From Neoechinorhynchus agilis (taxonomy: Eukaryota > Animalia > Acanthocephala): 64,000 bases of DNA. A program made the position numbers and the translations under genes. The stretch spans positions 1,824,711 through 1,888,710 of the forward strand of contig CM121341.1 of NCBI GenBank assembly GCA_051530055.1. Direction: 5' to 3'. The notes beneath the pieces are model-generated. The model saw only the letters and a list, made by a program, of their open reading frames with translations, was not told the DNA's origin and did not search any database. Positions 21,463 to 49,555 of this stretch are shown here, piece by piece; the stretch's first letter is position 1, and the number at the start of each line of letters is the position of its first letter.

Positions 21463-21915
21463 GTTCGCAAGGTTTTCCTTGCTTCTTCAGTCGCTATCTA
21501 AAATGGAGATGATATAGACAGCAAGTGATGTCCGGATGCAGCTCAGATTCGCGGGTTTGCTAATATCCAAAGTGTGGAGGATCCGCACACACCTCCTTCG
21601 GTTTGTTGCCGACTAATTTGTTCGTCATGCTATGCAACTTTGGTAGGACCTGAGTGTGGTTTGATTTGTTGCCTTCCATCGTCCGAATTTAACCGGATGT
21701 GAATAGCCTCATGGATCAGTCTTCTTATATCCGGCTCACTTGATAAGAATGCTGCTTTTCCAAAATCCACCTTGTGCTCTGGTGGTTCGAGATTGCTGAG
21801 GATTTGTCGAAAGTCCTGCAAGCCTTTTTATGCTGCGATTCTTGATTCCTTGCATAGTTTGTCCAATGGAGCATTCTGCACATGAAATTTTGTGGATCCC
21901 TGATTTGGTCTCTTG
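21463..21915 (-). mobile_element. Penelope-like element 3' relic: frameshifted GIY-YIG endonuclease plus downstream hammerhead-like core
   Basis: KSGIHKISCAECS-IGQTMQGIKNR and HKVDFGKAAFLSSEPDIRRLIHEAIHI; shares IGQTMQGI with the 31 kb element. Core CTGAAGA-A-GCAAGG-AAAA-CCTTGC-GAAC at 21490..21463. Confidence 0.8.
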
Positions 21916-21968
21916 TTTAGCTTTCCTCTTGAGAATACCCGCACCTCGAGCTCCCTCGCCCAACCTAG

Positions 21969-24205
21969 ATGCCTGCTGCAGTAGCCACTCCCAAATTTTT
22001 GGAGTATTCGAACGTATCATCGACCGACATTGATATTAAAACTAAAGGGAAATTAAGATTTGAAACGGATAAAATCATTTTCACTAACACGAGTAACAAG
22101 GAGGATAAAGTGACGACCGTCTTTGAAGTTAAAGACATAAAAAATGCATATTTTACTCAGACGGCTCAAGGTTACATGCTCATTCTACTCACAGCATTCT
22201 CTCCCGACGACGATAATAGCATTAGTAGCGATGATCCTCATGTACTTGCTAGCCACTTCAGAGGCTTAAGCCTTGAAGACCTTGATTCGGTTCAGACGTT
22301 CATGCGAAGGAACTATGAGATTGAAATGAATGAAATGTTACGATCTGTCAAAGGCGCTGATGCTGGTGTCTTCGATCTTGAATTCGCGTATAACTCAATG
22401 CGTTTCATGGTCGATCAAAAACTTGGATTTGAGATTCCTCTCGATCAAGTCAATTCATGTGATCTTTGCAGTAAGAATGAAACGGTCATCAAGTTTCGTC
22501 CGAGGCAACAGGATCCTTGTCTGGTTGAAATCAGGTTCAGCATCCCTCAAGGCGGTGGCGGGGACGAGGAACGAATGGAGCGCTACCGACAAAAACTTAC
22601 TCGCTTAGCATCCGCTGAGGTTACCGAAAGCATTTGCGATGTTCCACAAATGTCATTTATGGTACCTAGGGGAAAGTATGACATGAAACTCGTGAAAGAT
22701 TTCGTTGATCTGCACGGTAAATCGTTTGATTATAAAATCATGTACAATCAAATCGCAATGGTATTTATTCTTGAAAATCCTCTGAAACGACATGTATATT
22801 TTGCTTTTAAAGTATGTGCATAGACTTCTGTTGAAGAGATTTTCACAATGATGGGTGAATTCTGTCTTAAAATACGTATTTTTCAAGAATATTTTAATCA
22901 GATATTATAGCTGTTCGAGCAAATTTTTGTGTATTTCACAAATGCCTGAGAATATAACATAACAAAATTTTCAAATCCTTGATCGTCTTGAGAAAGAAAT
23001 GATTTTTGCTCGATTTTTTTACTTTTGTAAATTTTGAAATATCTTGACCTCTCTTTTTTTGAACTGATGATGAACTCATTTACCGGGTATAGACCTAAAT
23101 AACACTTCTAACCATTTATGATTAATTTTTAATAATAGGTGAAAAATTCCCTTACCTGCTCAATTTATTATTTATTTTCCCAATTTCAATCACATAATTC
23201 ACGGGTATTTGAAAATAATTTTTAATGGTTTTCTGAAAATTATTTCAATGCTGTGGCGATTTTTTCTCCAGTTGGCGCAAATGTTTTCTCCCGTAACTTG
23301 TGAATTAACTTCTTAACCCTTGCTCCTTTTGTGAAATATCAATTTCTTATATAAATCAAAAATTCTGTTACACAAAATTTTAATTCTATTTCTTTTAATA
23401 AAGCGAACTTAATTGGCTCAAATTTTTTTGATATCATCTAACCTTGAATTCTCTGTGCAAATTCATGACTATATTAAATGATCACTAGCTAATCTTTTTT
23501 AATCGATTTCTCAACGGTAGCTTTGCGATATATCCACCTGTTCGACAAGGTCAAACCCTTTACCCGTTCGTAATTCTTCAATGCGAAAGTGATGAAGAGA
23601 TTGAACTGGACGTTAAACTCCCGGGTCATCCGGCCAACGATGATGAAGAGAAAATGAAAGGCGCAACTTATGAAGTTCTGGCTGAAATTCTCAAGCAGAT
23701 ATTACCTAACAAATTCAACGATCAATGTACATATCGATCAGCAGTAAACACAGAAGCTGCCTTTGTAAATGCTTCAATTCGTGCATGCAGTGGTCTCTTG
23801 TATCCCATGGACAAAGGAATCCTATTTATGCATAAACCTACATTCTATCTACCATATGAAGAAATGCTTTTAGTAGACATGGGTTCTGGAAACGAACCGA
23901 TTCAATCATCATCGAGTCTTAAAACGTTTATGGTCGAGATTAAGATGAAAAACGGTACGGCGTATTCGTTCAGTAGTATTGACCGAGAGGAGCAGAAACC
24001 ATTGGCTTCATTCATAAAGTCCAAGAGGGTAGACGTGAGTTTTATTAAAGGCGACACTACGACTGGAAATGTCGATAAGTTGATAAATGCGTTGGGTATT
24101 GATGAAGATAGCGCTGATGACGGAGATGATGAAGAAGATGAAGATTACGAGGCAAAATCGGCTGGTGCAGAGTCCGATGAAATAGAAAGTGATCACGAAG
24201 AGTGA
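21969..24205 (+). CDS. SSRP1: FACT complex subunit SSRP1/Pob3; exons about 21969..22811 and 23528..24205, about 506 aa
   Basis: LEYSNV..GKLRF start, KNETVIKF, EIRFSIP, PRGKYDMK, LHGKSFDYKI, PPVRQGQTLYPF, SGLLYPMDKGILFMHKP, FSSIDREE, acidic tail. The exon 2 acceptor is anomalous (see findings). Confidence 0.95.
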
Positions 24206-25062
24206 AGAAGACTGTTGGAAACTCATGAGCGGCGTGAAATTTATATGTTGTCTTCATAGGGAAGTCTTGCCGTATCCATATCTTGGATTTTGATACACAG
24301 GAGTACTTTTTAAAGGAAATCTTCACATTTTCTACCACGTCCTCCTTAAGCCTTTTGTAATATGCCTAAATTTAAGCCCAAATACTTAATGAAAAATATC
24401 ACACTTTTCGCTTCCTTTATTTGTAAAATATAGATTTTGCAAAACTCTATCAGCATCAATGTTCATTTGAAGCAATCGGGTGTGCTACCTCCATAACCCA
24501 ATCACAATTGTTTAGCGAACGAAAAACACACAGCGTTTAACGTCTCTTTGAATGTAACATCTTCTTTCCCCTTTTGCTTCTCTTGATCTCCGGTGCTTCT
24601 AGTTGAGATTTCGATTGGTCCAATCTGACTGGCAAATCAGCATCTTCTTGTTTTCGCCCTTCTTCGGACTTCTTTATCCTATGGCTGTCCTCATCAGAAC
24701 TAAAGAAAGAAAATTGTTAGAACATTTTTCCAATTTTTACCGAACACGAAACGTATTTTTAAATGTTATTGCAACTGTCCATAATTTCCTAGATTTTTTA
24801 TTATTTATATGACGCTGAATTTTTTTAAAGAATGTAATAAGTAAATCTTTAGAATCGCAGTTTACTTAAATCGGCAACACTTTTAGTTGGTGCTAACGGT
24901 TAATCGGTCATTTTATTGACCTAATGTAACCCTTCCTCGGAAATTAGATATCTAAATCGATCGAATAAATTTATAATTAAACTTTAGCGCTTTGCCGATA
25001 GCTACGGCGAGCGCGAGGGATGATTTTCACTTTCAGATCATTCCGGTTTTGCTAAATTTCGA

Positions 25063-25461
25063 ATGATATCTGACTCGTTTGCAAAGTTCCACGCTCATTG
25101 CCGCACTCTTTATGAGATGTCTGATGATTTCGAAACGTTCGTCGGTCAATTGCCTTCGACGTCAAATAACTCTCCACCGGCAACTGCGTCTTCACAATCA
25201 AGGTTGAACGCTTTAAATCAAGACCTTGTCCAGAGTTTGATGGAAGCAATTCTCGCCGATAATGTATCGAAAAATAAATGCGACAAAGTCAAACTGTCAT
25301 CGGAGGCAATAATCGCTTATACGGCAGCGATTAATTTGATTACCGATGAGCTAATTGCTAGAAGCGTTGATTGCCGTTGTGCTGAGGGTAATGGAAGTAA
25401 TAATGAACTGAATGAAAGCCATCTTTTCTCGGTTATGGCGCAAGTTCTGTTTGATGTATGA
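25063..25461 (+). CDS. CENPX: Centromere protein X (MHF2/STRA13), histone fold
   Basis: DLVQSLM..KVKLSSEAIIAYTAAINLITDELIARSV..ELNESHLFSVMAQVLFDV parallels CENP-X KTKVSGDALQLMVELLKVFVVEAAVR..LEKVLPQLLLDF. Confidence 0.75.
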   Translation: MISDSFAKFHAHCRTLYEMSDDFETFVGQLPSTSNNSPPATASSQSRLNALNQDLVQSLMEAILADNVSKNKCDKVKLSSEAIIAYTAAINLITDELIARSVDCRCAEGNGSNNELNESHLFSVMAQVLFDV

Positions 25462-25551
25462 ACTGTTATTACATTTCAATTAAAGTGGATGCAAAAAAAC
25501 GGTTTTGAGTTAATTTCGGATGAAAAGCTTTTAATCGTCCTCGTTTAAGAT

Positions 25552-27342
<1,791 letters not shown>

Positions 27343-27678
27343 GTATTCGTTTTTGGATGGATTCTAAGGAAACAAAGTAGACCGTTTCCCGAACCCATTT
27401 TTTGCTCTTTTAATCTTGAAATAATTTATTTGATGGGCGATTAATAGCGTAAACTAAAGATTCTCATTGAATAAAAACTCATTATTATGAAAAACATATT
27501 TTGAATTCGGTGTCAATTAGAAATTGTTTGCCAACCGTCTTTTTATTACGTCTACTAACGAAAAAATCCAGAAACTTCACGATTTTCCTGTTCGTTTTCT
27601 AAAAAAAATTAGAATCGAGTGAATTATTTGCTCTTTACAACAAAAGCGATATTTTTACACGATTCAAACGGCGATGTG

Positions 27679-28843
27679 TTATTGTTCGTTTTGCGACTGC
27701 TGCTGCTGTTCATTATTGAACATTTGAGCTATAAGCGCATTGCTAGACTGCTGCTGTCCACCGCCGCCGAAACCAAAAGAAGGTAGACTGATGGTATTTA
27801 GGGCATTAAAAGCGGCAGCGTACAGATTCTGTTGTTGTTGCTGTTGAAAAACCCAATTATTGGGAAAGTCCTGCTGAATTGGTGCTGGTTGTTGAAGAGT
27901 TTCTTCTTTGATTTCATTGGTTCTCAGTTTTCCCAAACATTTAAGTAGATCATTATACGCCGTCCGATATTCGTCGACCTGAGTATTACATGAGATCTTT
28001 TTCAGTGCTTCTAACCGTTTTTTAACTTCTGGATGTTCAACTAAATGTTCACTTGATTGAATAGTAACGCAACACATAGCTTCATGTTCCTTCGTGGCCA
28101 TATACCGATAAATCATATGTTTGATTAAACTGGTGGTATTCACGAAATTGGACACTGGCCGGGCGACAACACTCCTTTGTACCCGTTTAACCACGTCCGC
28201 ATACTCGTTTCTCATTCGTCCTCTGAACTCACTCGATACTTCGTCGTCGTCTTCTTCTAAATCAATCAATGACACGAATACTCGTTCGTCCCGAAGAATA
28301 TCTTCTACTGGTATAAGCCCATGACGCATCTTCATTCTTTCTATGATCGCATTATATTCATTAATAAGACTGGCATGGTCTTCTTCTCCTTGTGGTTCCG
28401 GTTGGATCGGGTCACCGAGAGCACGTCGCTTTCCACCGCCGTCGCAATCAACGCGATCCAACTCTTCACGGATCAAACTTTCAAAATCGAGATCATCGTT
28501 GCGGTTGTACCTATGCGTTTGCTGCTGTTGTTGCTGCTGCTGCTGCTGTTGGTAGTGGTGGTGGTGGTGGTGGTAATCGTCAATAACATGCTGATCGATG
28601 ATCGATACCTCGTCGGGGACAGTTGGAGCGTCAAGGTCCCGGTATGCACGTTTCTTGTTCTTCGTTGGAGACCGACGGCGGTGGTGGTAATGATTGTGGT
28701 GGTGGTGGTGGTGATGGTGCCGTCTACGGTCAACTGACGACGTCGATTCAGCCAACGTTAGACCAGGCGGGTGAAGCGGACCGACTTCTTGGTGCCGAAA
28801 ACTACTTTCCAAGTTCAAACGGTCTTCAGTCGTCAAAAACGCA
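27679..28843 (-). CDS. Hypothetical His/Gln-rich protein; large 3' exon, probably spliced to upstream exon(s) near 29073..29432
   Basis: 385-codon ORF with poly-His and poly-Gln tracts, helical middle region, and an aaacag acceptor at 28844. No family recognised. Confidence 0.55.
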
Positions 28844-29072
28844 CTGTTTATGCATCGGTGGCCAACGAAAACAAACGGAGAAAAGTTTGAAGGGTTTTAA
28901 AAATGCCATCATGCGCTCCATAACAATCAGTTTCAAAAGGTGCAAGAAAGAGCGGTTCGGCCGTGACTATAAAAAGGAACTAGTAAATATGAGAATCCGA
29001 TGAGAGCAAAGAACTTATGTCTGTCGCCATTCTCAGCGAGCTCTCGTCGGCATGAGAGTTAAAAGAAAAAAA

Positions 29073-29432
29073 CTAACAAAAATCCGCCACTACCACGACA
29101 AGAGCACATTGGCCTCCAACGTGCTTTAAGAACTCATGAGGAATTCTGCGTCTTCTTTGAACCGATATTCTTTGATTAAGCGCGGGTCGCTGCTGTTCCC
29201 AACTTCTAGGAGCATAATACGAATTAAGTGGAGGCGCATATTGCTGATCGTTGAACATTCCGTGAAACCGGTAGCTTTGTTGATTCGACTGGATTCTCGG
29301 TCCGAATTGGTGCCTAATAGGACGCAAATATACATCTGGACCTGGCGGGAAACGAGGATCTTGATGGGTCATTTCGTTATGAGTAAGGAAGTTCGAAGAG
29401 TTTTCGCGGATAACGTGATTCTTCCGCGACAC
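29073..29432 (-). CDS. Probable 5' exon (Pro/Gln/Arg-rich) of the 27679..28843 gene
   Basis: Open frame of similar composition on the same strand; splice junctions not resolved. Confidence 0.3.
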   Translation of the reverse strand: MSRKNHVIRENSSNFLTHNEMTHQDPRFPPGPDVYLRPIRHQFGPRIQSNQQSYRFHGMFNDQQYAPPLNSYYAPRSWEQQRPALNQRISVQRRRRIPHEFLKHVGGQCALVVVVADFC

Positions 29433-30344: not shown

Positions 30345-30475
30345 GATTGAACTGGACGTTAAACTCCCGGGTCATCCGGCCAACGATGATGAAGAGAAAA
30401 TGAAAGGTGCAACTTATGAAGTTCTGGCTGAAATTCTCAAGCGGATATTACCTAACAAATTCAACGATCAATGTA
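30345..30475 (+). pseudogene. 131-bp duplicated fragment of SSRP1 exon 2
   Basis: Matches 23599..23729 at 129/131 positions (GGC>GGT, CAG>CGG). Confidence 0.93.
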
Positions 30476-30756
30476 TGATCCATTCCAATACTACCTTTAA
30501 TACCCTTATAATATTCTCAAAAATCGATTCGTTTCAATGCACGGAAAATTCGTGAGTTCCCACTCATTACGTTTATTCAAGCTGGTTGAAATGTTTTTCT
30601 CTCGATGGCCACGATTGTTGAGAAAGGAGATGCCTTGCGTGAAAATATTTTAATAACTGATCTTTCCACTTCATAGAAAAAGAAAGAAGATTTCTTTTGC
30701 GATGTTTTTTCTCTCTCGAAAAAGCTCAAAGAACAAAAATCTTGGAATAATTCAGG

Positions 30757-32075
30757 AAATATAATTTTGGTGAACATACTCCCGGTCATAACCTATTTGA
30801 TTTTGATTTATTTAAGATATTTCGAAGGAGGTAACTTCGCCTCACCAGTCATCTAAAAATATGTTTTTACCACTCAGGTTTTAAGCTCGAGTGCACGGGA
30901 TAGCCAAACCCGAAGCTCGGGGCCAATTATCCGACTACGTTTTTTCCATGATTTTAGCATTAATTTTTTAAACGTCGCTGGCTGGAAGTCTCAAGCTAAA
31001 ATTAGCTTTATTTCCTTCGATCGTGTTGGACACAGCGATGTGTAAGGCCTCCAAAACAAGCCGCCTTTTTAAGTTTTGTTCTATTTCTATAAAGTCGGTG
31101 CCACCAAAATCCACTCGATGCTTACATGTCTCTTGATGATTAGAGATTGCCGACGAATGCTAAAATCGACTGCAGACTTGCTTATGTTGAGCGACCCTCT
31201 TCTCGATGCCTTGCATCGTTTGTCCGATATAGACTTTCTCACACTGTTCACAGTGCATTCGGTAGATCCCATGAGTCAGCTCAATTCTACCCTTCCTCTT
31301 GAATGTGCTTCTGAGAGCGATTCCTTTAGTATTGTATAGACGAATTCCAGCCTTCTTAACTTATAATGGAGTAAATCATTTGATTCGTGTCATATCAATG
31401 AAGTGCACTCTTTCGAAGCATACAGGCTCTGCAGACGATTTTTTGTTGTTTTGCGGATGATAGTTTCTGCCTCTGATTCCACGGTCTATAATCCATTTGG
31501 AATATCCCCTCATTTTTAGCTCCTGGACTATCCTCTCCCTTTCCTTACTCCACGCCAATCGAGTAGATGAGATAAGAAAAGCTCTTCGGAAGGAGGACAT
31601 TACAACCGAGATTTTATACTTCATCGGTTTTTGAGTTGACCAGTGTGGTGGTCCGCATAGTAGATTCTCCTTACGATAAAGTGACGTGCCAACTTTGCCT
31701 TGTGCCGACCGCTTTACCAGGACGTCCAGGAAAGAGACATCACCGTTGTTGTTCTCTTCTTTGAATGTCCACTGTATGTGTGGATCTTGATTGTTAAGTT
31801 CAGCATTTAGTAAATCTCTGTTGTTGTTTGAATAAGTCAAAATGAATACATCGTCCACATAACGCCACCGCCGATTTACATGACTATGAAGCTCCAAGAA
31901 AATGTACTCGCAATGCCGCATGTAAATGTCGGCCAAGGTCGGGGCAATCTCTAATCATCAAGAGACATGTAAACATCGAGCGGATTTTGGTGGCACCAAC
32001 TTACTCGCGAAATATTTTCAATAAATCAAAATCAAATAGGTTATGACCGGGAGTATGTTCACCAAAATTATATTT
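30757..32075 (-). mobile_element. 5'-truncated Penelope-like retroelement: RT + GIY-YIG pseudogene, 3' pLTR-like hammerhead relic and a 5' inverted segment
   Basis: RT: PTLADIYM, WRYVDDVF, VSFLDVLV, LYRK, GYS. Same frame continues to GIYRMHCEQCEKVYIGQTMQGIEKRVAQH and EQNLKRRLVLEALHI, with nonsense codons at 31378, 31363, 31162. Core CTGGTGA..GAAATATC at 30848..30816. 31945..32075 is an inverted copy of 3' sequences. Confidence 0.92.
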
Positions 32076-32119
32076 TGACTTACCCGAAAGATTTTCTATC
32101 GATGACTTCAGGAAATGTT

Positions 32120-33860
32120 TGTGTTAAAAGCATTAAACCGTAGAATTTTATTTGTTGTTTATTTTTTAGATAAATGCCTGATTCCGTAACACAACTCTTT
32201 GAATACTTCACGGAATCATCGATAGAAAATCCTTCGGGTTAGTCAAAGTATAATTTTGGTGAAAATGCTCCCGGGTTACACATTTAAAACTTACAAGCAA
32301 TGACTGATGAGTCGAGGTTACCTCGGGAAATATCTCCAATAAATCAAATATACTATTACCGGGAGTATTTTCACCCAAATTATGCTTCTATAGATGTTTG
32401 TGTTAAAAGCATCAAACAGTAGAATTTTATTTGTTGTTTATTTTTCAGATAAATGCCTGATTCCGTAACACAACTCTTTGAATACTTCAGGGAATCATCG
32501 ATAGAAAATCCTCCGGGTTAGTCAAAGTATAATTTTGGTGAAAATGCTCCCGGGTTACACATTTAAAACTTACAAGCAATGACTGATGAGTCGAGGTTAC
32601 CTCGGGAAATATCTCCAATAAATCAAATATACTATTACCGGGAGTATTTTCACCCAAATTATGCTTCTATAGATGTTTGTGTTAAAAGCATCAAACAGTA
32701 GAATTTTATTTGTTGTTTATTTTTCAGATAAATGCCTGATTCCGTAACACAACTCTTTGAATACTTCAGGGAATCATCGATAGAAAATCCTCCGGGTTAG
32801 TCAAAGTATAATTTTGGTGAAAATGCTCCCGGGTTACACATTTAAAACTTACAAGCAATGACTGATGAGTCGAGGTTACCTCGGGAAATATCTCCAATAA
32901 ATCAAATATACTATTACCGGGAGTATTTTCACCCAAATTATGCTTCTATAGATGTTTGTGTTAAAAGCATCAAACAGTAGAATTTTATTTGTTGTTTATT
33001 TTTCAGATAAATGCCTGATTCCGTAACACAACTCTTTGAATACTTCAGGGAATCATCGATAGAAAACCTTGTTAGTCAAAGTATAATTTTGGTGAAAATC
33101 TCCCGGGTTACTTTAAAACTTACAACAATGACTGATGAGTCGAGGTTACCTCGGGAAATATCTCCAATAAATCAAATATACTATTACCGGGAGTATTTTC
33201 ACCCAAATTATGCTTCTATAGATGTTTGTGTTAAAAGCATCAAACAGTAGAATTTTATTTGTTGTTTATTTTTCAGATAAATGCCTGATTCCGTAACACA
33301 ACTCTTTGAATACTTCAGGGAATCATCGATAGAAAATCCTCCGGGTTAGTCAAAGTATAATTTTGGTGAAAATGCTCCCGGGTTACACATTTAAAACTTA
33401 CAAGCAATGACTGATGAGTCGAGGTTACCTCGGGAAATATCTCCAATAAATCAAATATACTATTACCGGGAGTATTTTCACCCAAATTATGCTTCTATAG
33501 ATGTTTGTGTTAAAAGCATCAAACAGTAGAATTTTATTTGTTGTTTATTTTTCAGATAAATGCCTGATTCCGTAACACAACTCTTTGAATACTTCAGGGA
33601 ATCATCGATAGAAAATCCTTCGGGTTAGTCAAAGTATAATTTTGGTGAAAATGCTCCCGGGTTACACATTTAAAACTTACAAGCAATGACTGATGAGTCG
33701 AGGTTACCTCGGGAAATATCTCCAATAAATCAAATATACTATTACCGGGAGTATTTTCACCCAAATTATGCTTCTATAGATGTTTGTGTTAAAAGCATCA
33801 AACAGTAGAATTTTATTTGTTGTTTATTTTTTAGATAAATGCCTGATTCCGTAACACAAC
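32120..33860 (+). repeat. Tandem array of six 279-bp units (one is 270 bp) plus a partial seventh; each has a hammerhead-like core and the MED21 acceptor and first 8 codons
   Basis: gataaatgcctgattccg at 32169, 32448, 32727, 33006, 33276, 33555, 33834. CTGATGA cores at 32304, 32583, 32862, 33132, 33411, 33690. Confidence 0.97.
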
Positions 33861-34249
33861 TCCAACTCCTCTTTAGCAAGCAAATAGAACTGATGTGCAA
33901 CACAATTGGATCTTCCCTACTAAAACAAGTACAATCGACCCCAAATGGAACCGAATCCCCAACGACAGCGTCCATACAAATCCATACTCTGATCTCAAAT
34001 GCAGTTGCTATAAAAGAAATAATAGAGAAATTACCTGATGCTCCTGAACGAAGGAGTGTCGACAGCCTTCACGCCGAGTTTTCCGAAGCACAAGAAGCAA
34101 CGAATGTAGTTCAGAAGGAATTGACAGATCTAAGAGACAACATCCATAAAATGCGAATGAGCATTGAGAAGTCCTTGGATTTTTTCGGACGTGATGTAGA
34201 ACTTAATGGAAAAGCCAAGCGAAACGATAATAATGATTCACAAACTTAG
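33839..34249 (+). CDS. MED21: Mediator subunit 21 (MED21/SRB7), 136 aa
   Basis: MPDSVTQLQ..LMCNTIG and LISNAVAIKEIIEKLPD parallel MED21 MADRLTQLQ..QFCNAIG and LIARTAKDIDVLIDSLPS; C-terminal coiled coil; expected length. Confidence 0.85.
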   Translation: MPDSVTQLQLLFSKQIELMCNTIGSSLLKQVQSTPNGTESPTTASIQIHTLISNAVAIKEIIEKLPDAPERRSVDSLHAEFSEAQEATNVVQKELTDLRDNIHKMRMSIEKSLDFFGRDVELNGKAKRNDNNDSQT

Positions 34250-41511: not shown

Positions 41512-42918
41512 GGTCGTGTAAGCGTGTGCAGTAGGATTTAGTCTAAAATCGAAGCCTTCAATAGATGGGCGCTTGATTGTTGCGTGGCAACGATGACGAT
41601 ACAGCGAGAAAAGTAGGCATGTTTTCAATGATTTCCGATAGAAAACCTATGGGCGTGTAGAGACGTTTTCTAAAGAAACCAAGAGCCGTAGAGTTCTTTC
41701 GAGAAAACGTCAATAAAAGTGTTCAAGCTGTTCAATTTTGTACAGAAAGATAGTACGTAAGTTTAGGTTTCCTGTTCTAACGAAATAGACCACGTTTCCA
41801 ACTTTATCATCAAAAAAAGTGTCCATGTCAATAGAAACTGGAAGATAATCTCGGTCTCTCGCATAAAAGGATCGCGTTTCTGCTAGACTCTCTCAAAAGC
41901 GGTGAAGTTCGCCGTTCTTTTAACTGTGCACTAGCAATCCAACGAGCTTATATACAAAGCAATAGGCTACAAAAGAAGCGATATACAAAAAGTTTACCAG
42001 GTCTAAAAGCATCCTGGATGTTTTTTTCTTAACATTCGACTGTACATTGTGGACGACATCATCAAAATATGTTTAATGGCTACTCAGTAGGGCCAACGAG
42101 CGTGCAGGTAGCATCACAAGGTTGTCAGGCAAAAAATACGCCAAAGGGTGTGAAGCAAAAGGTACTGAATGCATGCCATGCAACGCTGATACAACATCGA
42201 CGAGGCAGAATAGAAGAAATAATATTCACAATCAGGGCAGCAGGAACGTTAATAGTGGATGCTTGTCGTGGAAAACGATTCGGGTTTACATAACGTATTG
42301 ATAGCGAGAAACGACAACAATGGATTAGTTCTGCTTTAAAAAGCCGTCAGTGGAAAATGTCTAAAATCAGTGACTTATTCTATGAGAAATGCCTCAAATG
42401 AAATTTCAAAGAACAGTCAGGAATATCTCTAATGTTGTGTGTGGAGAGCGAACAAAAACACTAAATTTCATCAACGGCAATAGTTAACGTTTAAAAAAGA
42501 CAAACACTTCAACGAGTTCTTCAAATTACACGCTTAAAAAACAAGTGCTTGCTACACAAATCTAAGTTCTGAATTCGCAAAGAATCTCGTGAATACTGAT
42601 TTAAAAACCAACACTCTAGCAAAAGATTATGATGATCGCTCGGATGAAACGTATTTTGAATTCAGACATTTCGACAGAGGGAGCCTCACCCGCCCCCATC
42701 AATAAGTCATTGTTAACTCCATAGCGAAATATCTCAATTCAAATATGTTTTATCCGATGGATTATAACATCTCCAACTAATCATTCAGAAAGATTTTCTC
42801 ACAAATATCTTTCCTAATAGTTGGAATTGTTGTGCAACGGAATATGATCACAACATCATCAACTATATCATTAAGACAAATTAGGATTCATGTTTAGGTC
42901 TTTACCGGTAAATAATTC

Positions 42919-43035
42919 TTTTATTAAAGACGTTTCGAACATTGTAAGGTTCATTGTCAGTTTTAAAATACAAGTAGTCAAGTAAGCGGAATAATGATGA
43001 TGAAACCGACGAGGCTCGAAACGTCTTTAATAAAA
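42919..43035. repeat. Fold-back with 20-bp perfect arms carrying two outward-facing degenerate hammerhead-like cores
   Basis: ttttattaaagacgtttcga / tcgaaacgtctttaataaaa. Minus core CTGACAA-T-GAAC..GTTC-GAA-ACGT-C; plus core ATGATGA-T-GAAACC..GGCTC-GAA-ACGT-C. Confidence 0.8.
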
Positions 43036-43072
43036 AACTATTTAACGGATGAAGACCTGAACAATAATCCTA

Positions 43073-43890
43073 TCCAACTCTATCATCCCCAAGGATTTTC
43101 TCTAGATGATTTTCGTCGTTATTTTGAGTTGTGGTGATCATCATTTCTCGGATAAAACATATTTCGATCCAATAAAATATGTTTTATCCAAGAAATTATG
43201 ATAACCACATCTCCAACTCTATCATCCCCGAGGATTTTCTCTAGATGATTTTCGTCGTTACTTTTTTGCTGTGGTGATCATCATTTCTCGGATAAAACAT
43301 ATTTCGATCCAATAAAATATGTTTTATCCAAGAAATTATGATAACCACATCTCCAACTCTATCATCCCCGAGGATTTTCTCTAGATGATTTTCGTCGTTA
43401 CTATGAGTTGTGGTGATCATCATTTCTCGGATATAACATATTTCGATCCAATAAAATATGTTTTATCCAAGGGATTATGATAACCACATCTCCAACTCTA
43501 TCATCCCCAAGGATTTTCTCTAGATGATTTTCGTCGTTACTATGAGTTGTGGTGATCATCATTTCTCGGATAAAACATATTTCGATCCAATAAAATATGT
43601 TTTATCCAAGGGATCAAAATAACCACATCTCCAACTCTATCATCCCCAAGGATTTTCTCTAGATGATTTCCCTCCTTATTTGGAGTTGTAGCGATCATCA
43701 TTTCTCGGATAAAACATATTTCGATCCAATAAAATATGTTTTATCCAAGGGATCAAAATAACCACATCTCCAACTCTATCATCCCCAAGGATTTTCTCTA
43801 GATGATTTTCGTCGTTACTATGAGTTGTGATGATCATCATTTCTCGGATAAAACATATTTCGATCCAATAAAATATGTTTTATCCAAGGG
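43073..43890. repeat. Second array of about 6 x 139-bp family A units
   Basis: gatccaata at 43166, 43306, 43445, 43584, 43723, 43862; same orientation as, and near-identical to, 3505..4337. Confidence 0.95.
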
Positions 43891-44752
43891 AGTATAATCA
43901 CCATAAATCGAACTCTAAAAGAACTAAAGAGAAACCCAAAAACATGATTGTATGAGCAAAACACTCAGCTGCTCAATATCTCAATCTTAAATTTATGATA
44001 TTTTTCTTATATGGTCCATTCATACGAAGCCAATGCTTCCATTTCTAAAAAATGGTGGAAAGTGTTGTTCGAATTTAAACGTATCCACGTTTTTTTTGTG
44101 ATACTCAGAAATACAGGAGATCAACGCATGGAAAGTTCAACGGAAAGATCTTTTGGGCGAGACAGAATGCGTACAAAGATTTCAATGTCTGATTCTCGCT
44201 CGCAATGAATACACCGTCGATTCACCGTCATTTCTAGTTCATGGCCTACGACGAAGACATAGACGTCGTAGCAACTCTTTGCAACTCACATTTCCATCTC
44301 GCTGCATCATCATCGTTTGCATCCAGCTGCATCGATTAAGACCAAACGAAGGAGACGGGATGACAAATTGGAGGGGCTGATACAGGAAGGAAGAAGAGTG
44401 GAAAGCACTTTTCGTACACGTTGCATCAATCGTAAAAAGGAGCAACTAACTTTGATCACCGATCTTATTTTTCCTCTCGCATTCACTTTCGATCAAAATG
44501 TCGTCCAAGGTGTATTTACAAACCAAAAAAGAGAAGAAAATAATCTTTCGAACGATTGCAACAACAATTTTTTCGCGATGGTTAGGTTTGCATATTCACG
44601 TGTAATTTTTCAAATGCAAAAGGACCCAAGAACAGAGAAGTTTGCGCTAATGAGTTATAAAAACCGTGCTAATACAAACTGAAACTAACGTTAAAGCTAA
44701 CAAATTGAAAGTGGTTGGGAATATATCATCATTTATTGGAAGCAATTAGGCA

Positions 44753-46085
44753 GACGATAAAAACGGACATGTAAAATCATTCAAAAACTGATTTGATTGC
44801 AGAAAAAAAGAGAAAATCCATTTAGACAATTGACGAATTCTATTTATTGATAGTAATTATTAAAATTGACGATACAAACAGACATGTAAAATTTTTCAAA
44901 AACTGATTTGATTGCAGAAAAAAGAGAAAGTCCATTTACACAATTGACGAATTCTATTTATTGAGAGTAATTATTAAAGTTGACGATACAAACCGACGTG
45001 TAAAATCATTCAAAAACTGATTTGATTGCAGAAAAAAGAGAAAGTCCATTTAGACAATTGACGAATTGTATTTATTGATAGTAATTATTCAAATTGAGGA
45101 TAAAAACGGACCTGTAAAATCATTCAAAAAACTGATTTGATTGCAGAAAAAGAGAAAGTCCATTTAGACAATTGACAAATTCATTTTATTGGTAGTGATT
45201 AGGCAAATTGACGATAAAAACGGACATGTAAAATGTTTACACAACTGATATGATTGCAGAAAAAGATAAAATCCATCTACACAATTGACGAATTGTATTT
45301 ATTGAGAGTAATTACTCAAATTGAAGATACAAACGGACATGTAAAATAATTCAAAAACTGATTAAATAACGAAAAAAAAGAGAAAATCCATTTAGACAAT
45401 TGACGAGTTATTTTTGTTGATAGTGATTAGGAAAATTGACGATAAAAACGGACATGAAAAATCATTCAAATACTGATTTGATTGCAGAAAAAAAAGAAAA
45501 AATCCATCTACACAACTGACGAGTTCTTTTAATGGTAGTGATTAGGCAAATTGACGATACAAACAGACATGTAAAATCTTTCAAAAACCAACTATATAAC
45601 GAAAAAAGGGGAAAATCCATTTACACAATTGACGAATTCTATTTATTGATAGTAATCATTAAAATTGACGATAAAAACGGATCTGTAAAATCATTAGAAA
45701 ACTGATTTGATTGCAGAAAAAAATAAAATCCATTTAGACAATTGACGAGTTCTTTTTATTGGCAGTGATTAACAAAATTGACGATACAAACGGACATGTA
45801 AAATCATTCAAAAACTGATTAAATAACGAAAAAAAGGAGAAAATCCATTTAGACAATTGACGAATTCTATTTATTGATAGTAATTATTCAAATTGACGAT
45901 AAAAACGGACATGTAAAATCATTCAAAAACTGATTTGATTGCAGAAAAAAATAAAATCCATTTAGACAATTGACGAGTTCTTTTTATTGGCAGTGATTAT
46001 GCAAATTGACGATAAAAACGGACATGTAAAATCATTCAAAAACTGATTAAATAACGAAAAAAAGAGAAAATCCATTAACACAAAT
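44753..46085. repeat. Tandem array of about 12 x 114-bp diverged units
   Basis: Unit starts at 44753, 44868, 44982, 45096, 45210, 45323, 45438, 45553, 45667, 45780, 45895, 46008. Confidence 0.95.
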
Positions 46086-46481
46086 GACATTAAAATTAGC
46101 TTAGGTCGATCAATGCAGGTCAGCGGCTCTGCAGCTAAAATTATTCTCGAATGGAGAGAACTCGATTGAGGTCACATAAAATACGTGAGCATCAAAATGA
46201 TTTTAATCGAAGTTCCTTATAAATTAATTCTTTCGTACGGGTGGAATCACTGTTTTTGCGAATTTTAGCTTAATTTCAACCGAGTGCAGATTTTTGGAAT
46301 AATTGAAGACGTTTTTTCTGGGAGCGATAATTCGGCGTTGATTTAATTTTTTGTTTAGGGAATATTTATTGGGCTTTTTAGAAACACTCCAAATCTTAAA
46401 AGATAATGTTCTGTGGTGCTGCGGTTTTCCTCACGCTGGCAGTATTCCCTCGTTGTACTGCGAGGCGGTGGCGAAGTAATT

Positions 46482-46652
46482 AAAATGATTTTATTTTAAA
46501 ATCCGATATTTCGGCACAATCTTGTGCCAGGCGGATTTTAGGCTCAATCTTAGGACTGTACATTTTGATCCATTCGCCACGTAATTTTTTAGACCTTGAT
46601 AAACGCGTACAAGATTGTTTCGAAATATCGGATTTGAAAATAAAATCATTTT
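46482..46652. repeat. Fold-back element with arms of about 43 bp
   Basis: aaaatgattttattttaaaatccgatatttcggcacaatcttg / caagattgtttcgaaatatcggatttgaaaataaaatcatttt. Related half-copies near 29555 and 48428. Confidence 0.85.
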
Positions 46653-47934
46653 ATTGATAGTTGCAACCTAAAATTTAAAAGAAAATTATTAATTGTTGTG
46701 GCCACTTTTCTCTTAACCTCCCCGATATTAATTGATTTATTGTAAATTTTCAACAGTATGAAATCATTTTATTTGTGGAGAAATATTTCGAAAAAGAGGA
46801 AACCTCGTCTTATCAATCATTGCTGGTAATTTTTTATAAAATGACCTGTAACCGGGTGAGTATCGTGACCACAATTCAAAATTTACCACCGCGATATGGA
46901 TTTTCTCTGGATATGATTATTTTAAGTGTTACAATGAAAACAGATTGATGAAACTTTAGAGCTTTGTAACCTCAGTTTTTGATATTGCTTAGGCAAAGAA
47001 TAATTTATTAAGAAGTAATCGATTTGTGGGGATAAATTTAGTGGAAAGTTAAATCTTTTCAGCTTCACGCTTGTGTTTATTTTTAAGTGGGCAAAAAGAG
47101 TTATATAAAGACGTTTTATTTATGTAAGAAAAGAACGATCCACACACTTGCCAGCATCTATCTTTGCTGAAGGTGTCTGGATGACGGATGTTGAGGCAAG
47201 GGAGGTGGGACTTGTCTTTGAAGGGGTGTTGATGTGGGATCGGATACTTTGTACAGGAGATGAGCCATCGCTCTTTAACTCTCAATTGCCGTCCTGGTGT
47301 AATGGTCGAAAGGACGGATGCAGCGTTTTCGCCCATTAACTTAGAAATTTATTTCTTCAAAGGTTTTAAAAGCGAGCTTCTGCCAAGTTTTAAGACGACT
47401 GAACAAGTCGGCAATAAGCATCTTAGTGAGTCGACGTAGACCAAAGCGATTGCCACTGAATATCGATTAAATCAAGAAATTGAACTACATTTAAATAGTC
47501 GCTAAAGATTAAGAAGAAGAATACGATGTGAGGTTGAGAATGCGATTTTGCTTCTCGTTCAAAGAGTTTTTTATTCGTTTTTCTGCTCTTTTCCGTCTCA
47601 TGTTTTTAATGGAAACATTAATTTTCCACCTATTATAAAAAGTACGCGATGATATCTTTTACATTAGAGAGCGGTTGACAATTCTTTGATTATGGAAATG
47701 TAACAGGCTTTATACGTTCCTTCCTTGTGATTTATTGTACATTCGTCAATAGTTCCGATGAGCAACAAATGTTCTAGAGGAAGGCTTATTATTCTTAAAT
47801 GTTTTTTATTGACAGGCCGGTTCTATTGATTCCGATTATTAGGTACTTTCTTCAGCTTTTTGCTATGAAGCCACACCGTTCTCTTACATCAGACAAGAAG
47901 TGATTTGATCACTTAAAATCCATGAATCATACGC

Positions 47935-48230
47935 GGTCCGTCCGGATTCTCAGATCCCTCCCGAGGAGATGGGGCTCATCGGTGGATTTCTGTGCCAAGA
48001 GGAGGTCAAGTTTTTACTTGAGCCTTGAGTCCCTGTTTTAGTAGGGTCAAATTGTTCAATGTCCGCAATCGTCTACGATTCCTAACCAAAGGGACGAAAT
48101 ACGTTGGGGAAGCTAAAAGGAAACTCACTGAGAAGTATCCGGACGGGGATCCGGGTACAAACTCATAACCGCGTGATTTTATGCGCTTTCCTGATGTAAG
48201 AATCAGCGTGGTTTCATGCCAAAAAGCCTA
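47935..48230 (-). repeat. Dispersed repeat homologous to 2940..3150; possible Gypsy RNase H relic
   Basis: See 2940..3150; broken translation includes ELKAQVK-like and HLLGRDLRIRTD segments. Confidence 0.35.
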
Positions 48231-48515
48231 GGAAGGTACAGAATAATCTAAATATTTTATTATTGTTAATATTTAAGACTAAGGATGGTATCGCACCGAG
48301 CTACGCTGAATAGAAAAAATTAGAGTGGTCATCCACTATTTAAGTAAAGTTCTTTCGTACAAATGACGTCATGCAAAATTATTGTTTTTGAACATCGAAT
48401 TGTTTTTTTGTATGGCGGGCAAAAAATTAAAATGATTTATTGAATCCGATATATCGGAAGCACACGCAATCTTGAGCATATTTATGAACAATTGTAAGTT
48501 TGTACGACGTAAACA

Positions 48516-48723
48516 ATTGTTATTTGTTGATAGGAGAGGTGAATGAAATTCAGATTTTTATTGGATATTTCGATCCACTATCTCGGATCTTCTTCAGCGA
48601 TTGCTTGTAAGTAACACATATTTAAAAACTTACAAGCAATCGCTGAAGAAGATCCGAGATAGTGGATCGAAATATCCAATAAAATCTGAATTTCATTCAC
48701 CTCTCTTATCAACAAATAACAAT
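48516..48723. repeat. Near-perfect fold-back (97/96-bp arms, 15-nt loop) with an intact hammerhead catalytic-core motif on each strand
   Basis: Arms differ by 1 mismatch and 1 indel. Plus core CTGAAGA-A-GATCC-GAGATAGT-GGATC-GAA-ATAT-C at 48643..48676. Confidence 0.93.
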
Positions 48724-49153
48724 GAATTATCTTTCCAACGTAAACAATTGTGTATGAATATTTAAATGAACCCCAGATAACAATATCGACTAATTTACGC
48801 TCGATTATTGTTAATTCTTCCGTGTTGATAGCCATATCACATTGGAGATGTGGTGATTATAATCGCCTGAATAAAACGTATTTTATTGAATTGAGATATT
48901 TGTAAGGAGGTTGTGTTAGTTTTTTATGCTATATTACTCGTGATTGTCATGGTTCGGGACTTATTCGTTCGAAATATCTCAATAAAAAATATTTTGTATC
49001 ACCGCATCTCCAACTTTATCATCCCCAAGAATTTTTAAAGAATATCCTTTTTTTTATCAACGTACAATCTTATATCGCATCGAAAAGTGGTCCTTAGTAA
49101 TAATTTTTAGCAACCAATGGCCCCATGGATCCCTGAATGAGGGCAACTATAAC

Positions 49154-49343
49154 TTTCAATTAGCGATATTCACTGAGAAATAGATTTATATTGAAAATTT
49201 TCGGCCTTTTCGTTGGCCTTCTTCAGTCAGATTGCTTGTAGGATTTTTAAAAACTTACAAGCAATCTGACTGAAGAAGGCCAACGAAACGGCCGAAAAAT
49301 TTTCAATATAAATCTATTTCTGAGTGAATATCGCTAATTGAAA
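49154..49343. repeat. Near-perfect fold-back (arms about 87 bp) with a hammerhead core motif on each strand
   Basis: Arms 49154..49240 and 49256..49343. Plus core CTGAAGA-A-GGCC-AACGAAAC-GGCC-GAAAAATTTTC at 49270..49304. Confidence 0.93.
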
Positions 49344-49555
49344 TTGAAACAATAATGATTAATTTCTTTACAGCAACTATAACTGTTCATGGTTTGTTTA
49401 AGGTCATTGAATCCAAGATTGTTTGTAAGTTTTGTGCTTTTAAATCTCGTTTTGGATTTTTTCGAAGAAACTTTATTTGTTGACGTCAGATTTCTTATCG
49501 ATCAGTTGAAATTTTTAACCACTATTGAATTACGTGTACTTTTTTTTGTAGAACG

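What the first reader, a model, noticed from the sequence alone, without database searches (positions are those of the whole stretch)
21463..49304. Window-wide family of minimal hammerhead-ribozyme cores with covarying stem II, tied to Penelope-like elements
Seen: one layout, CTGANRA-N-[stem II]-GAA-[4-nt palindrome]-H, recurs at 21490(-), 26268(+), 30848(-), six times in the 279-bp array, 42960(-), 42994(+), both strands at 48.6 kb and both strands at 49.2 kb. Stem II differs between copies yet stays complementary (GCAAGG/CCTTGC, GTGGA/TCCAT, TCGAGG/CCTCGG, GAAC/GTTC, GATCC/GGATC, GGCC/GGCC). The helix III tetramer is palindromic in most copies (ATAT, ACGT, AATT; not at 21463). Two copies lie just 3' of GIY-YIG ORFs in the same polarity. 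Known: Penelope-like elements carry minimal type I hammerheads with palindromic helix III that act as dimers. Inference: one ribozyme-bearing Penelope lineage produced much of the fold-back and short tandem DNA here. Caveat: helix I is only 2-5 bp in cis, and several cores have core substitutions.
Basis: partly seen in the sequence, partly recalled or inferred. Interest (0 to 1): 0.85.

Follow-up and report, generated by a model that had tools for sequence, protein, structure and literature searches.

The report
Penelope retroelement hammerhead motifs, confirmed
The repeated motif is real: it is the minimal hammerhead-ribozyme signature carried in the tails of Penelope-like retrotransposons, scattered here as relics, small hairpin-shaped insertions and one short tandem array in a thorny-headed worm genome. 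This is a correct identification of an already described kind of element, not a new one.

Summary
Observation confirmed. All 15 listed sites exist at the stated coordinates. The layout occurs 13 times against 0.9 expected (11 against 0.06 with a palindromic helix III). A covariance model built only from Penelope-like element (PLE) tails outside the window recovers the same list (12 hits at E<=0.005).

Stem II is 94% paired, with compensatory changes at every position. Helix I holds for only 2-3 bp.

The window is Neoechinorhynchus agilis (Acanthocephala), chromosome CM121341.1. Two copies follow degraded RT/GIY-YIG remnants. Relatives in this and other genomes carry the same motif after the ORF.

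Most copies lie in head-to-head fold-backs. Three fold-backs and the PLE remnant have 10-14 bp target-site duplications and a one-sided 13-35 bp extension, both PLE insertion hallmarks. The 279-bp array resembles a non-LTR retrozyme.

All of this matches Cervera & de la Pena 2014/2020 and Craig et al. 2021.

Caveats:
- Only three loci (ten copies) keep an intact core.
- No Rfam hammerhead model matches.
- Cleavage is untested.
- "One lineage" is an overstatement: there are several families, and only about 9% of the window's tandem DNA carries the motif.

Verdict: new members of a known kind, of modest interest.

The parts
21449..21500 (-). Decayed min-HHR. The core CTGAAGA and the 6-bp stem II are intact, but A15.1 is changed to C, so helix III (CTAT) is not palindromic.
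   Evidence: covariance model E=0.54
21690..21924 (-). Frameshifted GIY-YIG endonuclease relic, about 200 nt upstream of the 21490 motif in the same polarity. It lies just upstream of the SSRP1 start.
26161..26346 (.). Fold-back insertion made of two head-to-head PLE tails. The min-HHR on + (26262-26304) has G8 changed to A. The - arm has lost part of stem II. The unit is flanked by the 12-bp duplication GATTATACAATA (26149-26160 and 26347-26358) and has a 33-bp one-sided extension on the left. It lies inside a Methyltransf_5 gene model.
30761..31954 (-). 5'-truncated PLE remnant. It contains the RT tail with YVDD (31954-31379), the GIY-YIG endonuclease with three in-frame stops (31360-30968), a decayed min-HHR (30810-30854: A6 changed to G, stem II disrupted) and the 3' tail.
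31943..32106 (+). Inverted 5'-truncated copy next to the remnant. It has an endonuclease fragment joined to ACTTAC, only the 3' half of the HHR (GAAATAT), the tail and a ~35-bp extension. Together with the remnant it is bracketed by the 10-bp duplication TTCAGGAAAT (30751-30760 and 32107-32116).
32115..33862 (+). 279-bp tandem array of 6.3 units at 96-100% identity. Each unit has an inverted tail fragment plus leader, min-HHR and tail. The six HHRs lie at 32298-32340, 32577-32619, 32856-32898, 33126-33168, 33405-33447 and 33684-33726. The core is intact, 10.1-11.1 is U-G, and predicted cleavage is after C32613 and equivalent positions. It resembles a non-LTR retrozyme.
42882..43072 (.). Older fold-back with arms about 75% alike. 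The min-HHR on - (42923-42966) has G8 changed to A and helix III ACGT. The copy on + (42988-43031) has C3 changed to A and a collapsed stem II. It abuts the 139-bp satellite.
46481..46653 (.). Decayed fold-back. The - arm keeps stem II (GGCAC/GTGCC) plus GAAATATC. The + arm keeps a TTGATAA (U3-A8) box plus GAAATATC.
46776..46822 (-). Decayed min-HHR of the U3-A8 type (TTGATAA) with a disrupted stem II. It is homologous to L001:12387.
48516..48737 (.). Fold-back insertion with two 97-nt arms about 98% identical and a 15-nt spacer. Intact min-HHRs lie at 48558-48603(-) and 48637-48682(+), with predicted cleavage after C48676. The direct repeat ACGTAAACAATTGT lies at 48507-48520 and 48738-48751. 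The extension on the right is 13 bp.
49155..49372 (.). Fold-back insertion with intact min-HHRs at 49189-49232(-) and 49264-49307(+). The 12-bp duplication GCAACTATAACT lies at 49143-49154 and 49373-49384. The extension on the right is 29 bp.
42659..42708 (-). Possible further decayed copy (TTGATGG ... GAAATGTC). This is weak evidence.
   Evidence: (E=0.34)

Best explanation
These are the minimal type-I hammerhead motifs (min-HHRs) that sit in the 3' tail (pseudo-LTR) of endonuclease-bearing Penelope-like retrotransposons. Here they come from several PLE families of the acanthocephalan Neoechinorhynchus agilis.

Shown:
- Each motif has the boxes CUGANGA ... GAAA ... U-H.
- There is one unpaired nucleotide before stem II.
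- Stem II is 4-6 bp and covaries.
- Helix I is only 2-3 bp.
- Helix III is a 4-nt palindrome that cannot close on itself.
- The copies were laid down by PLE retrotransposition in three forms: (i) 5'-truncated RT/EN remnants with the motif 120-200 nt after the endonuclease; (ii) ~190-220-bp units of two inverted, extremely 5'-truncated tails joined head to head, bracketed by 10-14-bp target-site duplications with a one-sided 13-35-bp 'tail' extension; (iii) one 279-bp tandem array with one motif per unit.

Inferred, from the published behaviour of this class:
- Two sense copies pair through the palindromic helix III to form a dimeric ribozyme that cleaves after H17 and processes multimeric PLE or retrozyme transcripts.
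- In this window only the tandem array offers two sense copies on one transcript.
- In fold-backs each strand carries one sense copy opposite its own antisense, so those copies are probably passengers of insertion, not working ribozymes.
- Five of the fifteen listed copies carry core mutations and are relics.
For: - Enrichment: 13 sites against 0.9 expected, and 11 against 0.055 with a palindrome.
- Core-only site selection gives stems of 4-6 bp at the PLE loci and 0-2 bp elsewhere.
- Pair counts on 15 distinct instances: stem II is 94.4% paired, all six pairs show double changes, and the covariation score is 0.75 against 0.18 for shuffles (0/500) and 0.07-0.27 for slid controls. G10.1-C11.1 holds in 13/15. 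Pair 1.1-2.1 holds in 14/15, including four covariant cases, and helix I was not part of the descriptor.
- A covariance model built from eight outside-window PLE tails finds 12 window sites at E<=0.0044, followed by the decayed ones.
- PLE coding remnants: Pfam GIY-YIG at 27.2 bits. The RT tail has 37 homologues carrying RVT_1/HTH_animal, the best at 76% identity from N. agilis. The second endonuclease relic aligns at E~1e-8.
- The same layout lies after the ORF in L001-L007, including a head-to-head pair in L004 and the published U3-A8 core variant in L001 and L003.
- Flanking duplications of 12, 12 and 14 bp at three fold-backs and 10 bp around the PLE remnant with its inverted copy, each with a one-sided extension. 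The null P(>=12 bp) is 0.004.
- The literature describes every one of these features: PMC4209133 (min-HHR definition, dimers, opposite-strand pairs, U3-A8), PMC8557442 (inverted 5'-truncated copy, 30-40-bp tail, HHR-bearing PLEs in an acanthocephalan), PMC11167929 (origin of the tail; HHR cleavage shown by C3/G8 mutants) and PMC7229834 with the 2026 preprint 10.64898/2026.07.22.740005 (HHR tandem repeats related to PLE pLTRs).
Against: - No Rfam hammerhead family matches, even at E<=10 in 81-nt searches.
- Helix I is only 2-3 bp, and helix III is mostly the A/U-only AUAU, so a dimer would be thermodynamically weak.
- The array's motif has U10.1-G11.1 instead of the conserved G-C.
- Published min-HHRs cleave poorly in vitro. 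In the one PLE tested biochemically, HHR cleavage was not needed for insertion and no RNA ends mapped to the cleavage site (PMC4209133, PMC11167929).
- The instances used for the pair counts were selected with a descriptor requiring stems of at least 4 bp, so pairs 1-4 are partly circular. The non-circular support comes and from helix I.
- No expression or cleavage data exist for these copies.
Confidence: 0.88

Rival explanations
1. The motifs really are PLE-derived and structurally conserved, but they do not act as self-cleaving ribozymes in vivo. They are kept as a protein-recognition or folding element of the PLE 3' region, or they simply ride along with PLEs.
For: Helix I is very short and helix III is A/U-only. 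HHR catalytic mutants did not affect PLE insertion in vitro, and no RNA-seq ends were seen at the cleavage site (PMC11167929). In vitro activity of min-HHRs is low (PMC4209133). Naiad PLEs thrive without HHRs, and the authors raise the idea that HHRs parasitise PLEs (PMC8557442). The inner ends of the fold-back arms lie at a CTTACA word upstream of the motif, not at the cleavage site.
Against: The nucleotides conserved across unrelated families are exactly the catalytic ones (CUGANGA, GAA, A15.1/U16.1, H17). The known C3-G8 to U3-A8 core covariation recurs in L001, L003 and at 46.8 kb. That is hard to explain without selection on the catalytic fold. The Anolis PLE HHR does cleave, with C3/G8 rescue (PMC11167929).
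Confidence: 0.3
2. The 279-bp array is an ordinary DNA-level tandem duplication (unequal crossing-over or replication slippage) of a segment that happened to contain a PLE fold-back. It is not an RNA-mediated, retrozyme-type amplification.
For: Each unit contains about 96 nt with no similarity to PLE tails, plus an inverted tail fragment. The array's ends fall in that 96-nt part, not at the HHR cleavage site. Units are 96-100% identical, as in young satellites. Five other motif-free satellites lie in the same 64 kb.
Against: One HHR per 150-450-bp unit, low GC, a strongly self-paired monomer RNA (z=-5.8) and 76-77% similarity to the adjacent PLE tail are the published hallmarks of animal non-LTR retrozymes (PMC7229834; 10.64898/2026.07.22.740005). 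PLEs themselves typically insert as partial tandems (PMC8557442).
Confidence: 0.45
3. The sites are chance matches of a loose descriptor in AT-rich, hairpin-rich DNA, or the fold-backs are MITE or miRNA-type hairpins unrelated to ribozymes.
For: The fold-backs give weak sub-threshold hits to miRNA precursor models. No Rfam hammerhead hit was found. Many copies are duplicates of each other, through the array and the inverted arms.
Against: Shuffle expectation is 0.9 against 13 observed. A model trained on outside sequences recovers the sites. There is homology to tails that follow RT/GIY-YIG ORFs. Stem II lies within one arm, so it is not a by-product of arm-to-arm symmetry. The miRNA hits are far below gathering scores and only reflect long hairpins.
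Confidence: 0.02

Closest known systems
Minimal hammerhead ribozymes (min-HHR) of metazoan Penelope-like elements (Cervera & de la Pena 2014, PMC4209133)
   Same: [quoted passage not shown] Also the location in PLE tails/pLTRs, many solo copies from truncated elements, pairs on opposite strands 100-700 bp apart, the U3-A8 core variant, and high sequence heterogeneity between families.
   Different: The species (N. agilis) was not examined there. The array variant has U10.1-G11.1. Helix I is at the short end of the range (2-3 bp). Activity is untested here.
PLE insertion architecture: pLTRs, an inverted 5'-truncated upstream copy and a 30-40-bp 'tail' extension (Craig et al. 2021, PMC8557442; Frangieh et al. 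2024, PMC11167929)
   Same: Head-to-head inverted copies with tails pointing outward, a one-sided extension of 29-35 bp (13 bp at 48.6 kb), flanking target-site duplications, and C-terminal GIY-YIG after the RT. HHR-bearing PLEs were reported in another acanthocephalan (P. laevis).
   Different: Here most units are reduced to two ~90-100-nt tails with no coding sequence. The inner ends recur at the same CTTACA word in several loci, a detail I did not see mentioned in the passages I read of these papers.
Animal non-LTR retrozymes: short tandem repeats with type-I HHRs, expressed as circular RNAs (Cervera & de la Pena 2020, PMC7229834; Li et al. 2026 preprint 10.64898/2026.07.22.740005)
   Same: The 279-bp unit lies within the 150-450 bp range. 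It has one type-I HHR per unit, low GC, multiple head-to-tail copies, a highly self-paired predicted monomer RNA and sequence similarity to a PLE tail.
   Different: The motif is the minimal PLE type, not the canonical type with loop-loop contacts that gives efficient cleavage in invertebrate retrozymes. Expression and circularity are unknown. Only one array was seen, and it may be a local DNA duplication.
Rfam Hammerhead_1 (RF00163) and other curated hammerhead families
   Same: The same catalytic core nucleotides and type-I topology (helix I open).
   Different: No match at any threshold. The curated models expect a closed helix III hairpin and a longer helix I with loop 1, which these motifs lack.

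Membership tests
min-HHR of metazoan PLEs (PMC4209133) | Catalytic boxes C3U4G5A6N7G8A9 ... G12A13A14 ... A15.1/U16.1-H17 in type-I order | tested here: met
   Intact in 10 copies at 3 loci: the array (six copies), 48.6 kb (two) and 49.2 kb (two). There are single core changes in 42960-, 26268+, 21490-, 30848- and 42994+.
min-HHR of metazoan PLEs (PMC4209133) | [quoted passage not shown] | tested here: met
   Present in all 13 descriptor hits in the window and in all outside instances.
min-HHR of metazoan PLEs (PMC4209133) | Helix II supported by covariation, with a conserved G10.1-C11.1 pair | tested here: met
   94.4% of cells are paired, all six pairs show double changes, and G-C holds in 13/15. 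The exceptions are the array (U-G) and 26268 (G-U).
min-HHR of metazoan PLEs (PMC4209133) | Palindromic positions 15.2-16.2 / helix III, with no closed helix III hairpin | tested here: met
   ATAT, ACGT, AATT or AAATTT in all copies except 21490 (CTAT). Observed 11 against 0.055 expected by chance.
min-HHR of metazoan PLEs (PMC4209133) | Short helix I (2-5 bp) | tested here: met
   Pairs 1.1-2.1, 1.2-2.2 and 1.3-2.3 form in 14/15, 10/15 and 9/15 instances. There is no pairing beyond that.
min-HHR of metazoan PLEs (PMC4209133) | Location in the terminal repeat or tail of a PLE (RT + GIY-YIG element) | tested here: met
   The motif lies 120 nt after the endonuclease stop at 30.9 kb and about 200 nt after the endonuclease relic at 21.7 kb. 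The position is the same in L001-L007.
min-HHR of metazoan PLEs (PMC4209133) | Self-cleavage after H17, as a dimer | not testable with these tools
   This needs in vitro transcription or RNA end mapping. Folding only shows that stem II forms and that the monomer cannot close helix III.
Penelope-like element (EN+ clade) | RT with PLE-type motifs followed by a C-terminal GIY-YIG endonuclease | tested here: met
   RT tail with YVDD and 37 homologues carrying RVT_1/HTH_animal. GIY-YIG scores above the Pfam cut-off. Both are degraded, with stops and 5' truncation. The clade (Neptune or Penelope/Poseidon) was not determined.
Penelope-like element (EN+ clade) | Insertion signature: inverted 5'-truncated copy, one-sided tail extension and target-site duplication | tested here: met
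   Found at 26161-26346, 30761-32106, 48516-48737 and 49155-49372. Not found at 42882-43072 or 21.5 kb.
Animal non-LTR retrozyme (PMC7229834) | Head-to-tail repeats of 150-450 bp, each with one type-I HHR, GC below 50%, and no LTR/PBS/PPT | tested here: met
   279 bp x 6.3 units with one motif per unit and GC about 0.34.
Animal non-LTR retrozyme (PMC7229834) | [quoted passage not shown] | not testable with these tools
   No transcript data and no whole-genome search were available. Only the predicted compact fold of the monomer could be checked (z=-5.8).
Rfam hammerhead families (RF00163, RF00008, RF02275-7) | Score at or above the gathering threshold of the covariance model | tested here: not met
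   No hammerhead hit at gathering thresholds, nor at E<=10 over 31 kb, nor in two 81-nt searches.

The most novel reading that the evidence does not exclude
The ~200-bp head-to-head 'twin-tail' units may not be mere accidents of individual PLE insertions. They may be a heritable, non-autonomous fold-back family that PLE machinery copies as a unit.

Evidence in favour: the inner junction recurs, with both arms starting at a CTTACA word and sharing the leader CTTACACATTTAAAA(A/G)CTTACAAGCAAT. This is seen in at least four diverged loci on two chromosomes (48.6 kb, 49.2 kb, the array and 46.8 kb, and L001:12387). The hammerhead core stays intact while stem II is completely replaced between copies.

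If true, acanthocephalans would carry hairpin-shaped hammerhead SINEs whose propagation selects for the ribozyme fold.
Probability: 0.25. Interest if true: 0.45.

Novelty: new member of a known kind. Interest (0 to 1): 0.3.

Why it matters
This result mainly validates the first-stage reading. It also documents PLE hammerhead motifs, twin-tail fold-back insertions and a retrozyme-like array in Neoechinorhynchus agilis, whose genome paper does not mention them.

For annotation, it explains about nine small repeats and hairpins in 28 kb near host genes: the SSRP1 promoter region, an intron of a Methyltransf_5 gene, and the stretch upstream of the ORF at 49.5 kb. These might otherwise be mistaken for miRNA hairpins or MITEs.

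For ribozyme and PLE biology, it adds a compact natural set of intact and decayed min-HHRs with different stems, including a U10.1-G11.1 variant in a tandem context and U3-A8 variants. These could be used to test whether such minimal motifs cleave as dimers. It does not change what is known about the class.

Tried and rejected
- Rfam at gathering scores, at E<=10 over 20-51 kb, and in two 81-nt searches gave no hammerhead family. The only hits were sub-threshold miRNA-type matches to the long hairpins, which I rejected as evidence of miRNA genes.
- A word-indexed protein search with the endonuclease piece found nothing. The RT tail worked.
- Plain MAFFT alignments of the motifs misregistered stem II because loop lengths differ and TGATGATG is periodic. 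I replaced them with a loop-excised fixed-length alignment (A2) for the pair counts, and with an outside-only seed (A4) in which only the outer four pairs are modelled.
- My first target-site-duplication search at 48.6 kb used BLAST-inflated arm boundaries and found only a doubtful 10-mer. Realigning the arms gave the true boundaries and a 14-bp repeat.
- No duplication was found for the 42.9-kb fold-back, the 21.5-kb relic or the array as a whole.
- I tested whether the 139-, 104-, 114- and 141-bp satellites derive from PLE tails. There were no model hits. Only a weak similarity (69% over 51 nt, E=0.006) links the 139-bp unit to a tail in L001, so I did not count them.
- Cofolding two motif copies does not reproduce the active dimer. 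The minimum-energy structures either swap stem II strands or over-pair GAAAAUUUUC, so thermodynamic folding is uninformative about the catalytic fold.
- I considered the CTTAC/AAG leader as a splice acceptor or branch site and its antisense GTAAGT as a donor. There was no way to test this, so it is left as an observation.

Full report
**What the window is.** The window is eukaryotic. It contains a U2 snRNA gene and ordinary host genes: SSRP1, CENP-X, a Methyltransf_5 protein, a HECT ligase and Syf1. It also holds six tandem arrays. An exact-match lookup of the CENP-X ORF places it on Neoechinorhynchus agilis (Acanthocephala), GCA_051530055.1, chromosome CM121341.1, at about 1.85 Mb.

**Checking the observation.** Every cited site is present with the stated sequence.
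- I encoded the layout as CTGANRA, 0-1 nt, a stem of at least 4 bp, GAA, 4 nt, then H. It occurs 13 times, against 0.91+-0.94 in 200 block-wise dinucleotide shuffles.
- With a palindromic tetramer required, it occurs 11 times against 0.055.
- The copies are not independent. Six come from one array and four from two inverted repeats, but about 6-9 independent loci remain.
- The sites at 30848(-) and 42994(+) fail the strict descriptor because they have decayed.
- The predicted cleavage sites C32613 and C48676 are correctly computed.

- I selected sites by core boxes and palindrome only. These split into two groups. Stems of 4-6 bp close exactly at the box boundaries at all PLE-type loci, and stems of 0-2 bp occur at the remaining chance hits, both in the window and in fetched loci.
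- I built a covariance model from eight motifs taken only from outside the window. Searching the window with filters off returned 42960(-), the six array copies, 49226(-), 48597(-), 48643(+), 42994(+) and 49270(+) at E<=0.0044. Next came 30848(-) at E=0.076, 26268(+) at 0.082 and 21490(-) at 0.54.
- On a loop-excised alignment of 15 distinct instances, stem II is 94.4% paired and all six pairs show double changes. The covariation score is 0.75, against 0.18 for shuffles (0/500) and 0.07-0.27 for slid controls. G10.1-C11.1 holds in 13/15.
- Helix I was not in the descriptor. It is supported only for its first 2-3 pairs (14/15, 10/15 and 9/15), with G-C and U-A variants at pair 1.1-2.1.

**Link to Penelope-like elements.**
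- On the minus strand, 31954-31379 encodes an RT tail with YVDD, and 31360-30968 encodes a GIY-YIG endonuclease (GIYRMHCEQCEKVYIGQT ... SAISNH ... LEALHI) with three in-frame stops. The Pfam GIY-YIG score is 27.2 bits against a 22.6 cut-off. The decayed motif at 30848(-) lies 120 nt after the stop.
- A second, frameshifted endonuclease relic at 21924-21690(-) aligns to the first at E=9e-8 and 2e-8 and is followed by the 21490(-) motif.
- The RT tail has 37 homologues carrying RVT_1/HTH_animal domains. The best named hit is 76% identical and comes from N. agilis.
- DNA fetched around seven such homologues shows the same motif 100-900 nt after the ORF. The stems are unrelated but always complementary: GAGGC/GCCTC, GCGAGG/CCTCGC, GAACCA/TGGTTC, GGTC/GACC, GTGAAT/GTTCAC, GGTTT/AAACC and GGTTTA/TAGACC.
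- L004 contains a head-to-head pair, and L001 and L003 carry the U3-A8 core variant.
- L001, from another N. agilis chromosome, shares 86-90% identical PLE segments with the window and holds three different endonuclease remnants within 4 kb.

**Anatomy of the copies.** Except for 21490, every motif lies in a head-to-head inverted arrangement with the tails pointing outward. Four units are bracketed by direct repeats:

| Unit | Direct repeat | One-sided extension |
|---|---|---|
| 49155-49372 | 12-bp GCAACTATAACT | 29 bp |
| 26161-26346 | 12-bp GATTATACAATA | 33 bp |
| 48516-48737 | ACGTAAACAATTGT (9-14 bp) | 13 bp |
| 30761-32106 (PLE remnant plus inverted copy) | 10-bp TTCAGGAAAT | ~35 bp |

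A repeat of at least 12 bp occurs in 0.4% of random placements. The two arms of the 48.6-kb unit are 97 nt long and differ at two positions. Inverted 5'-truncated copies, a one-sided 30-40-bp 'tail' and frequent extreme truncation are the published PLE insertion signature (PMC8557442, PMC11167929). Six of the seven non-satellite fold-backs in the window are of this type.

**The 279-bp array.**
- Each unit contains an inverted tail fragment, then the leader, an intact-core motif and the tail. The motif-plus-tail part is 76-77% similar to the tail of the adjacent PLE remnant.
- A cleavage-to-cleavage monomer RNA folds to -77.6 kcal/mol (z=-5.8) and keeps the stem II hairpin.
- This fits the description of animal non-LTR retrozymes and their proposed origin from PLE pLTRs (PMC7229834; preprint 10.64898/2026.07.22.740005).
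- However, each unit also contains about 96 nt unrelated to PLE tails, and the array's ends do not coincide with the cleavage site. A local DNA-level duplication is therefore about as likely as RNA-mediated amplification.

**State of the cores.**
- Intact: the array copies (six, but with U10.1-G11.1), 48.6 kb (two) and 49.2 kb (two).
- Mutated: G8 to A at 42960(-) and 26268(+); A15.1 to C at 21490(-); A6 to G with a broken stem at 30848(-); C3 to A with a collapsed stem at 42994(+).

**Mechanism.**
- Shown: the motif's structure, its PLE origin, and how the copies were inserted.
- Inferred from the literature: two sense copies pair through the palindromic helix III to form a dimeric hammerhead that cleaves after H17 and processes multimeric transcripts.
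- Only the tandem array offers two sense copies on one transcript. In a fold-back, each strand has one sense copy facing its own antisense, so a long hairpin would compete with the ribozyme fold.
- The inner ends of the arms sit at a CTTACA word upstream of the motif, not at the cleavage site. Cleavage therefore did not define these insertions, which agrees with PMC11167929.

**Comparison with known families.** Every defining feature of the published min-HHR that could be tested is met. Catalysis could not be tested. Curated Rfam hammerhead models do not match at any threshold, as expected for motifs without a closed helix III. HHR-bearing PLEs are already catalogued in the acanthocephalan Pomphorhynchus laevis (PMC8557442). 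The N. agilis genome paper does not mention PLEs or hammerheads.

**Verdict.** The exception is the claim that a single lineage made much of the tandem DNA: several families are present, and only 1.75 of about 20 kb of tandem DNA carries the motif. This is a new set of members of a known kind, and interest is modest. The least ordinary residue is the recurrent inner junction of the twin-tail units, which could mean that the fold-back itself is a heritable non-autonomous element.

Noticed in passing
window 10156-10259 and 10258-20540; 20658-20849(-): A 10-kb satellite with a 104-bp unit runs from a short PLE endonuclease fragment to within about 120 bp of a U2 snRNA gene. The fragment has the same 'GGTGG.ACCAACTTAC' junction as 31960-32010. 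Three tandem arrays in the window (104-, 279- and 139-bp units) each begin exactly at the edge of a PLE fragment or fold-back.
   Followed up: partly
window 3504-4337 and 43073-43917: Two arrays of a 139-bp satellite whose unit contains a 35-42-nt hairpin (GGATAAAACATATTT...AAATATGTTTTATCC). They give weak miRNA-model hits. Their only similarity to a PLE tail is 69% over 51 nt to one in L001, and the HHR model does not match.
   Followed up: partly
window 5062-5181: A fold-back with perfect 46-nt arms and a 28-nt spacer. It has no hammerhead boxes and no similarity to the PLE tails. It may be a different small element.
   Followed up: no
window 48612-48640, 49240-49262, 32568-32582; L001 12340-12386: Both arms of the twin-tail units begin at a CTTACA word, and the leader is CTTACACATTTAAAA(A/G)CTTACAAGCAAT. 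On the opposite strand this reads TTG|GTAAGT, a consensus 5' splice site, which could matter for copies inside host introns.
   Followed up: no
window 30751-30760, 32107-32116 and position ~88-99 of each 279-bp unit: The word TTCAGGRAAT is the target-site duplication of the PLE insertion. It also sits inside every array unit, next to the inverted tail. This suggests either a preferred target or microhomology between the element end and the target.
   Followed up: partly
L001 12387, L003 6369, window 46776-46822(-) and 46570-46610(+): The U3-A8 catalytic-core covariant (TTGATAA) occurs in N. agilis and in an unrelated assembly, alongside the C3-G8 form.
   Followed up: partly
window 26161-26346; 21449-21950: One fold-back lies inside the gene model of a Methyltransf_5 (RsmH/METTL15-like) protein, probably in an intron. 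One PLE relic abuts the start of the SSRP1 coding sequence (21969).
   Followed up: no
window 27679-28836(-): A 385-aa ORF with long His and Gln runs and no Pfam match.
   Followed up: no
window 44753-46089 and 58687-64000: Two further satellites, with 114/457-bp and 141-bp units. The second runs off the window end. Neither has hammerhead model hits.
   Followed up: partly
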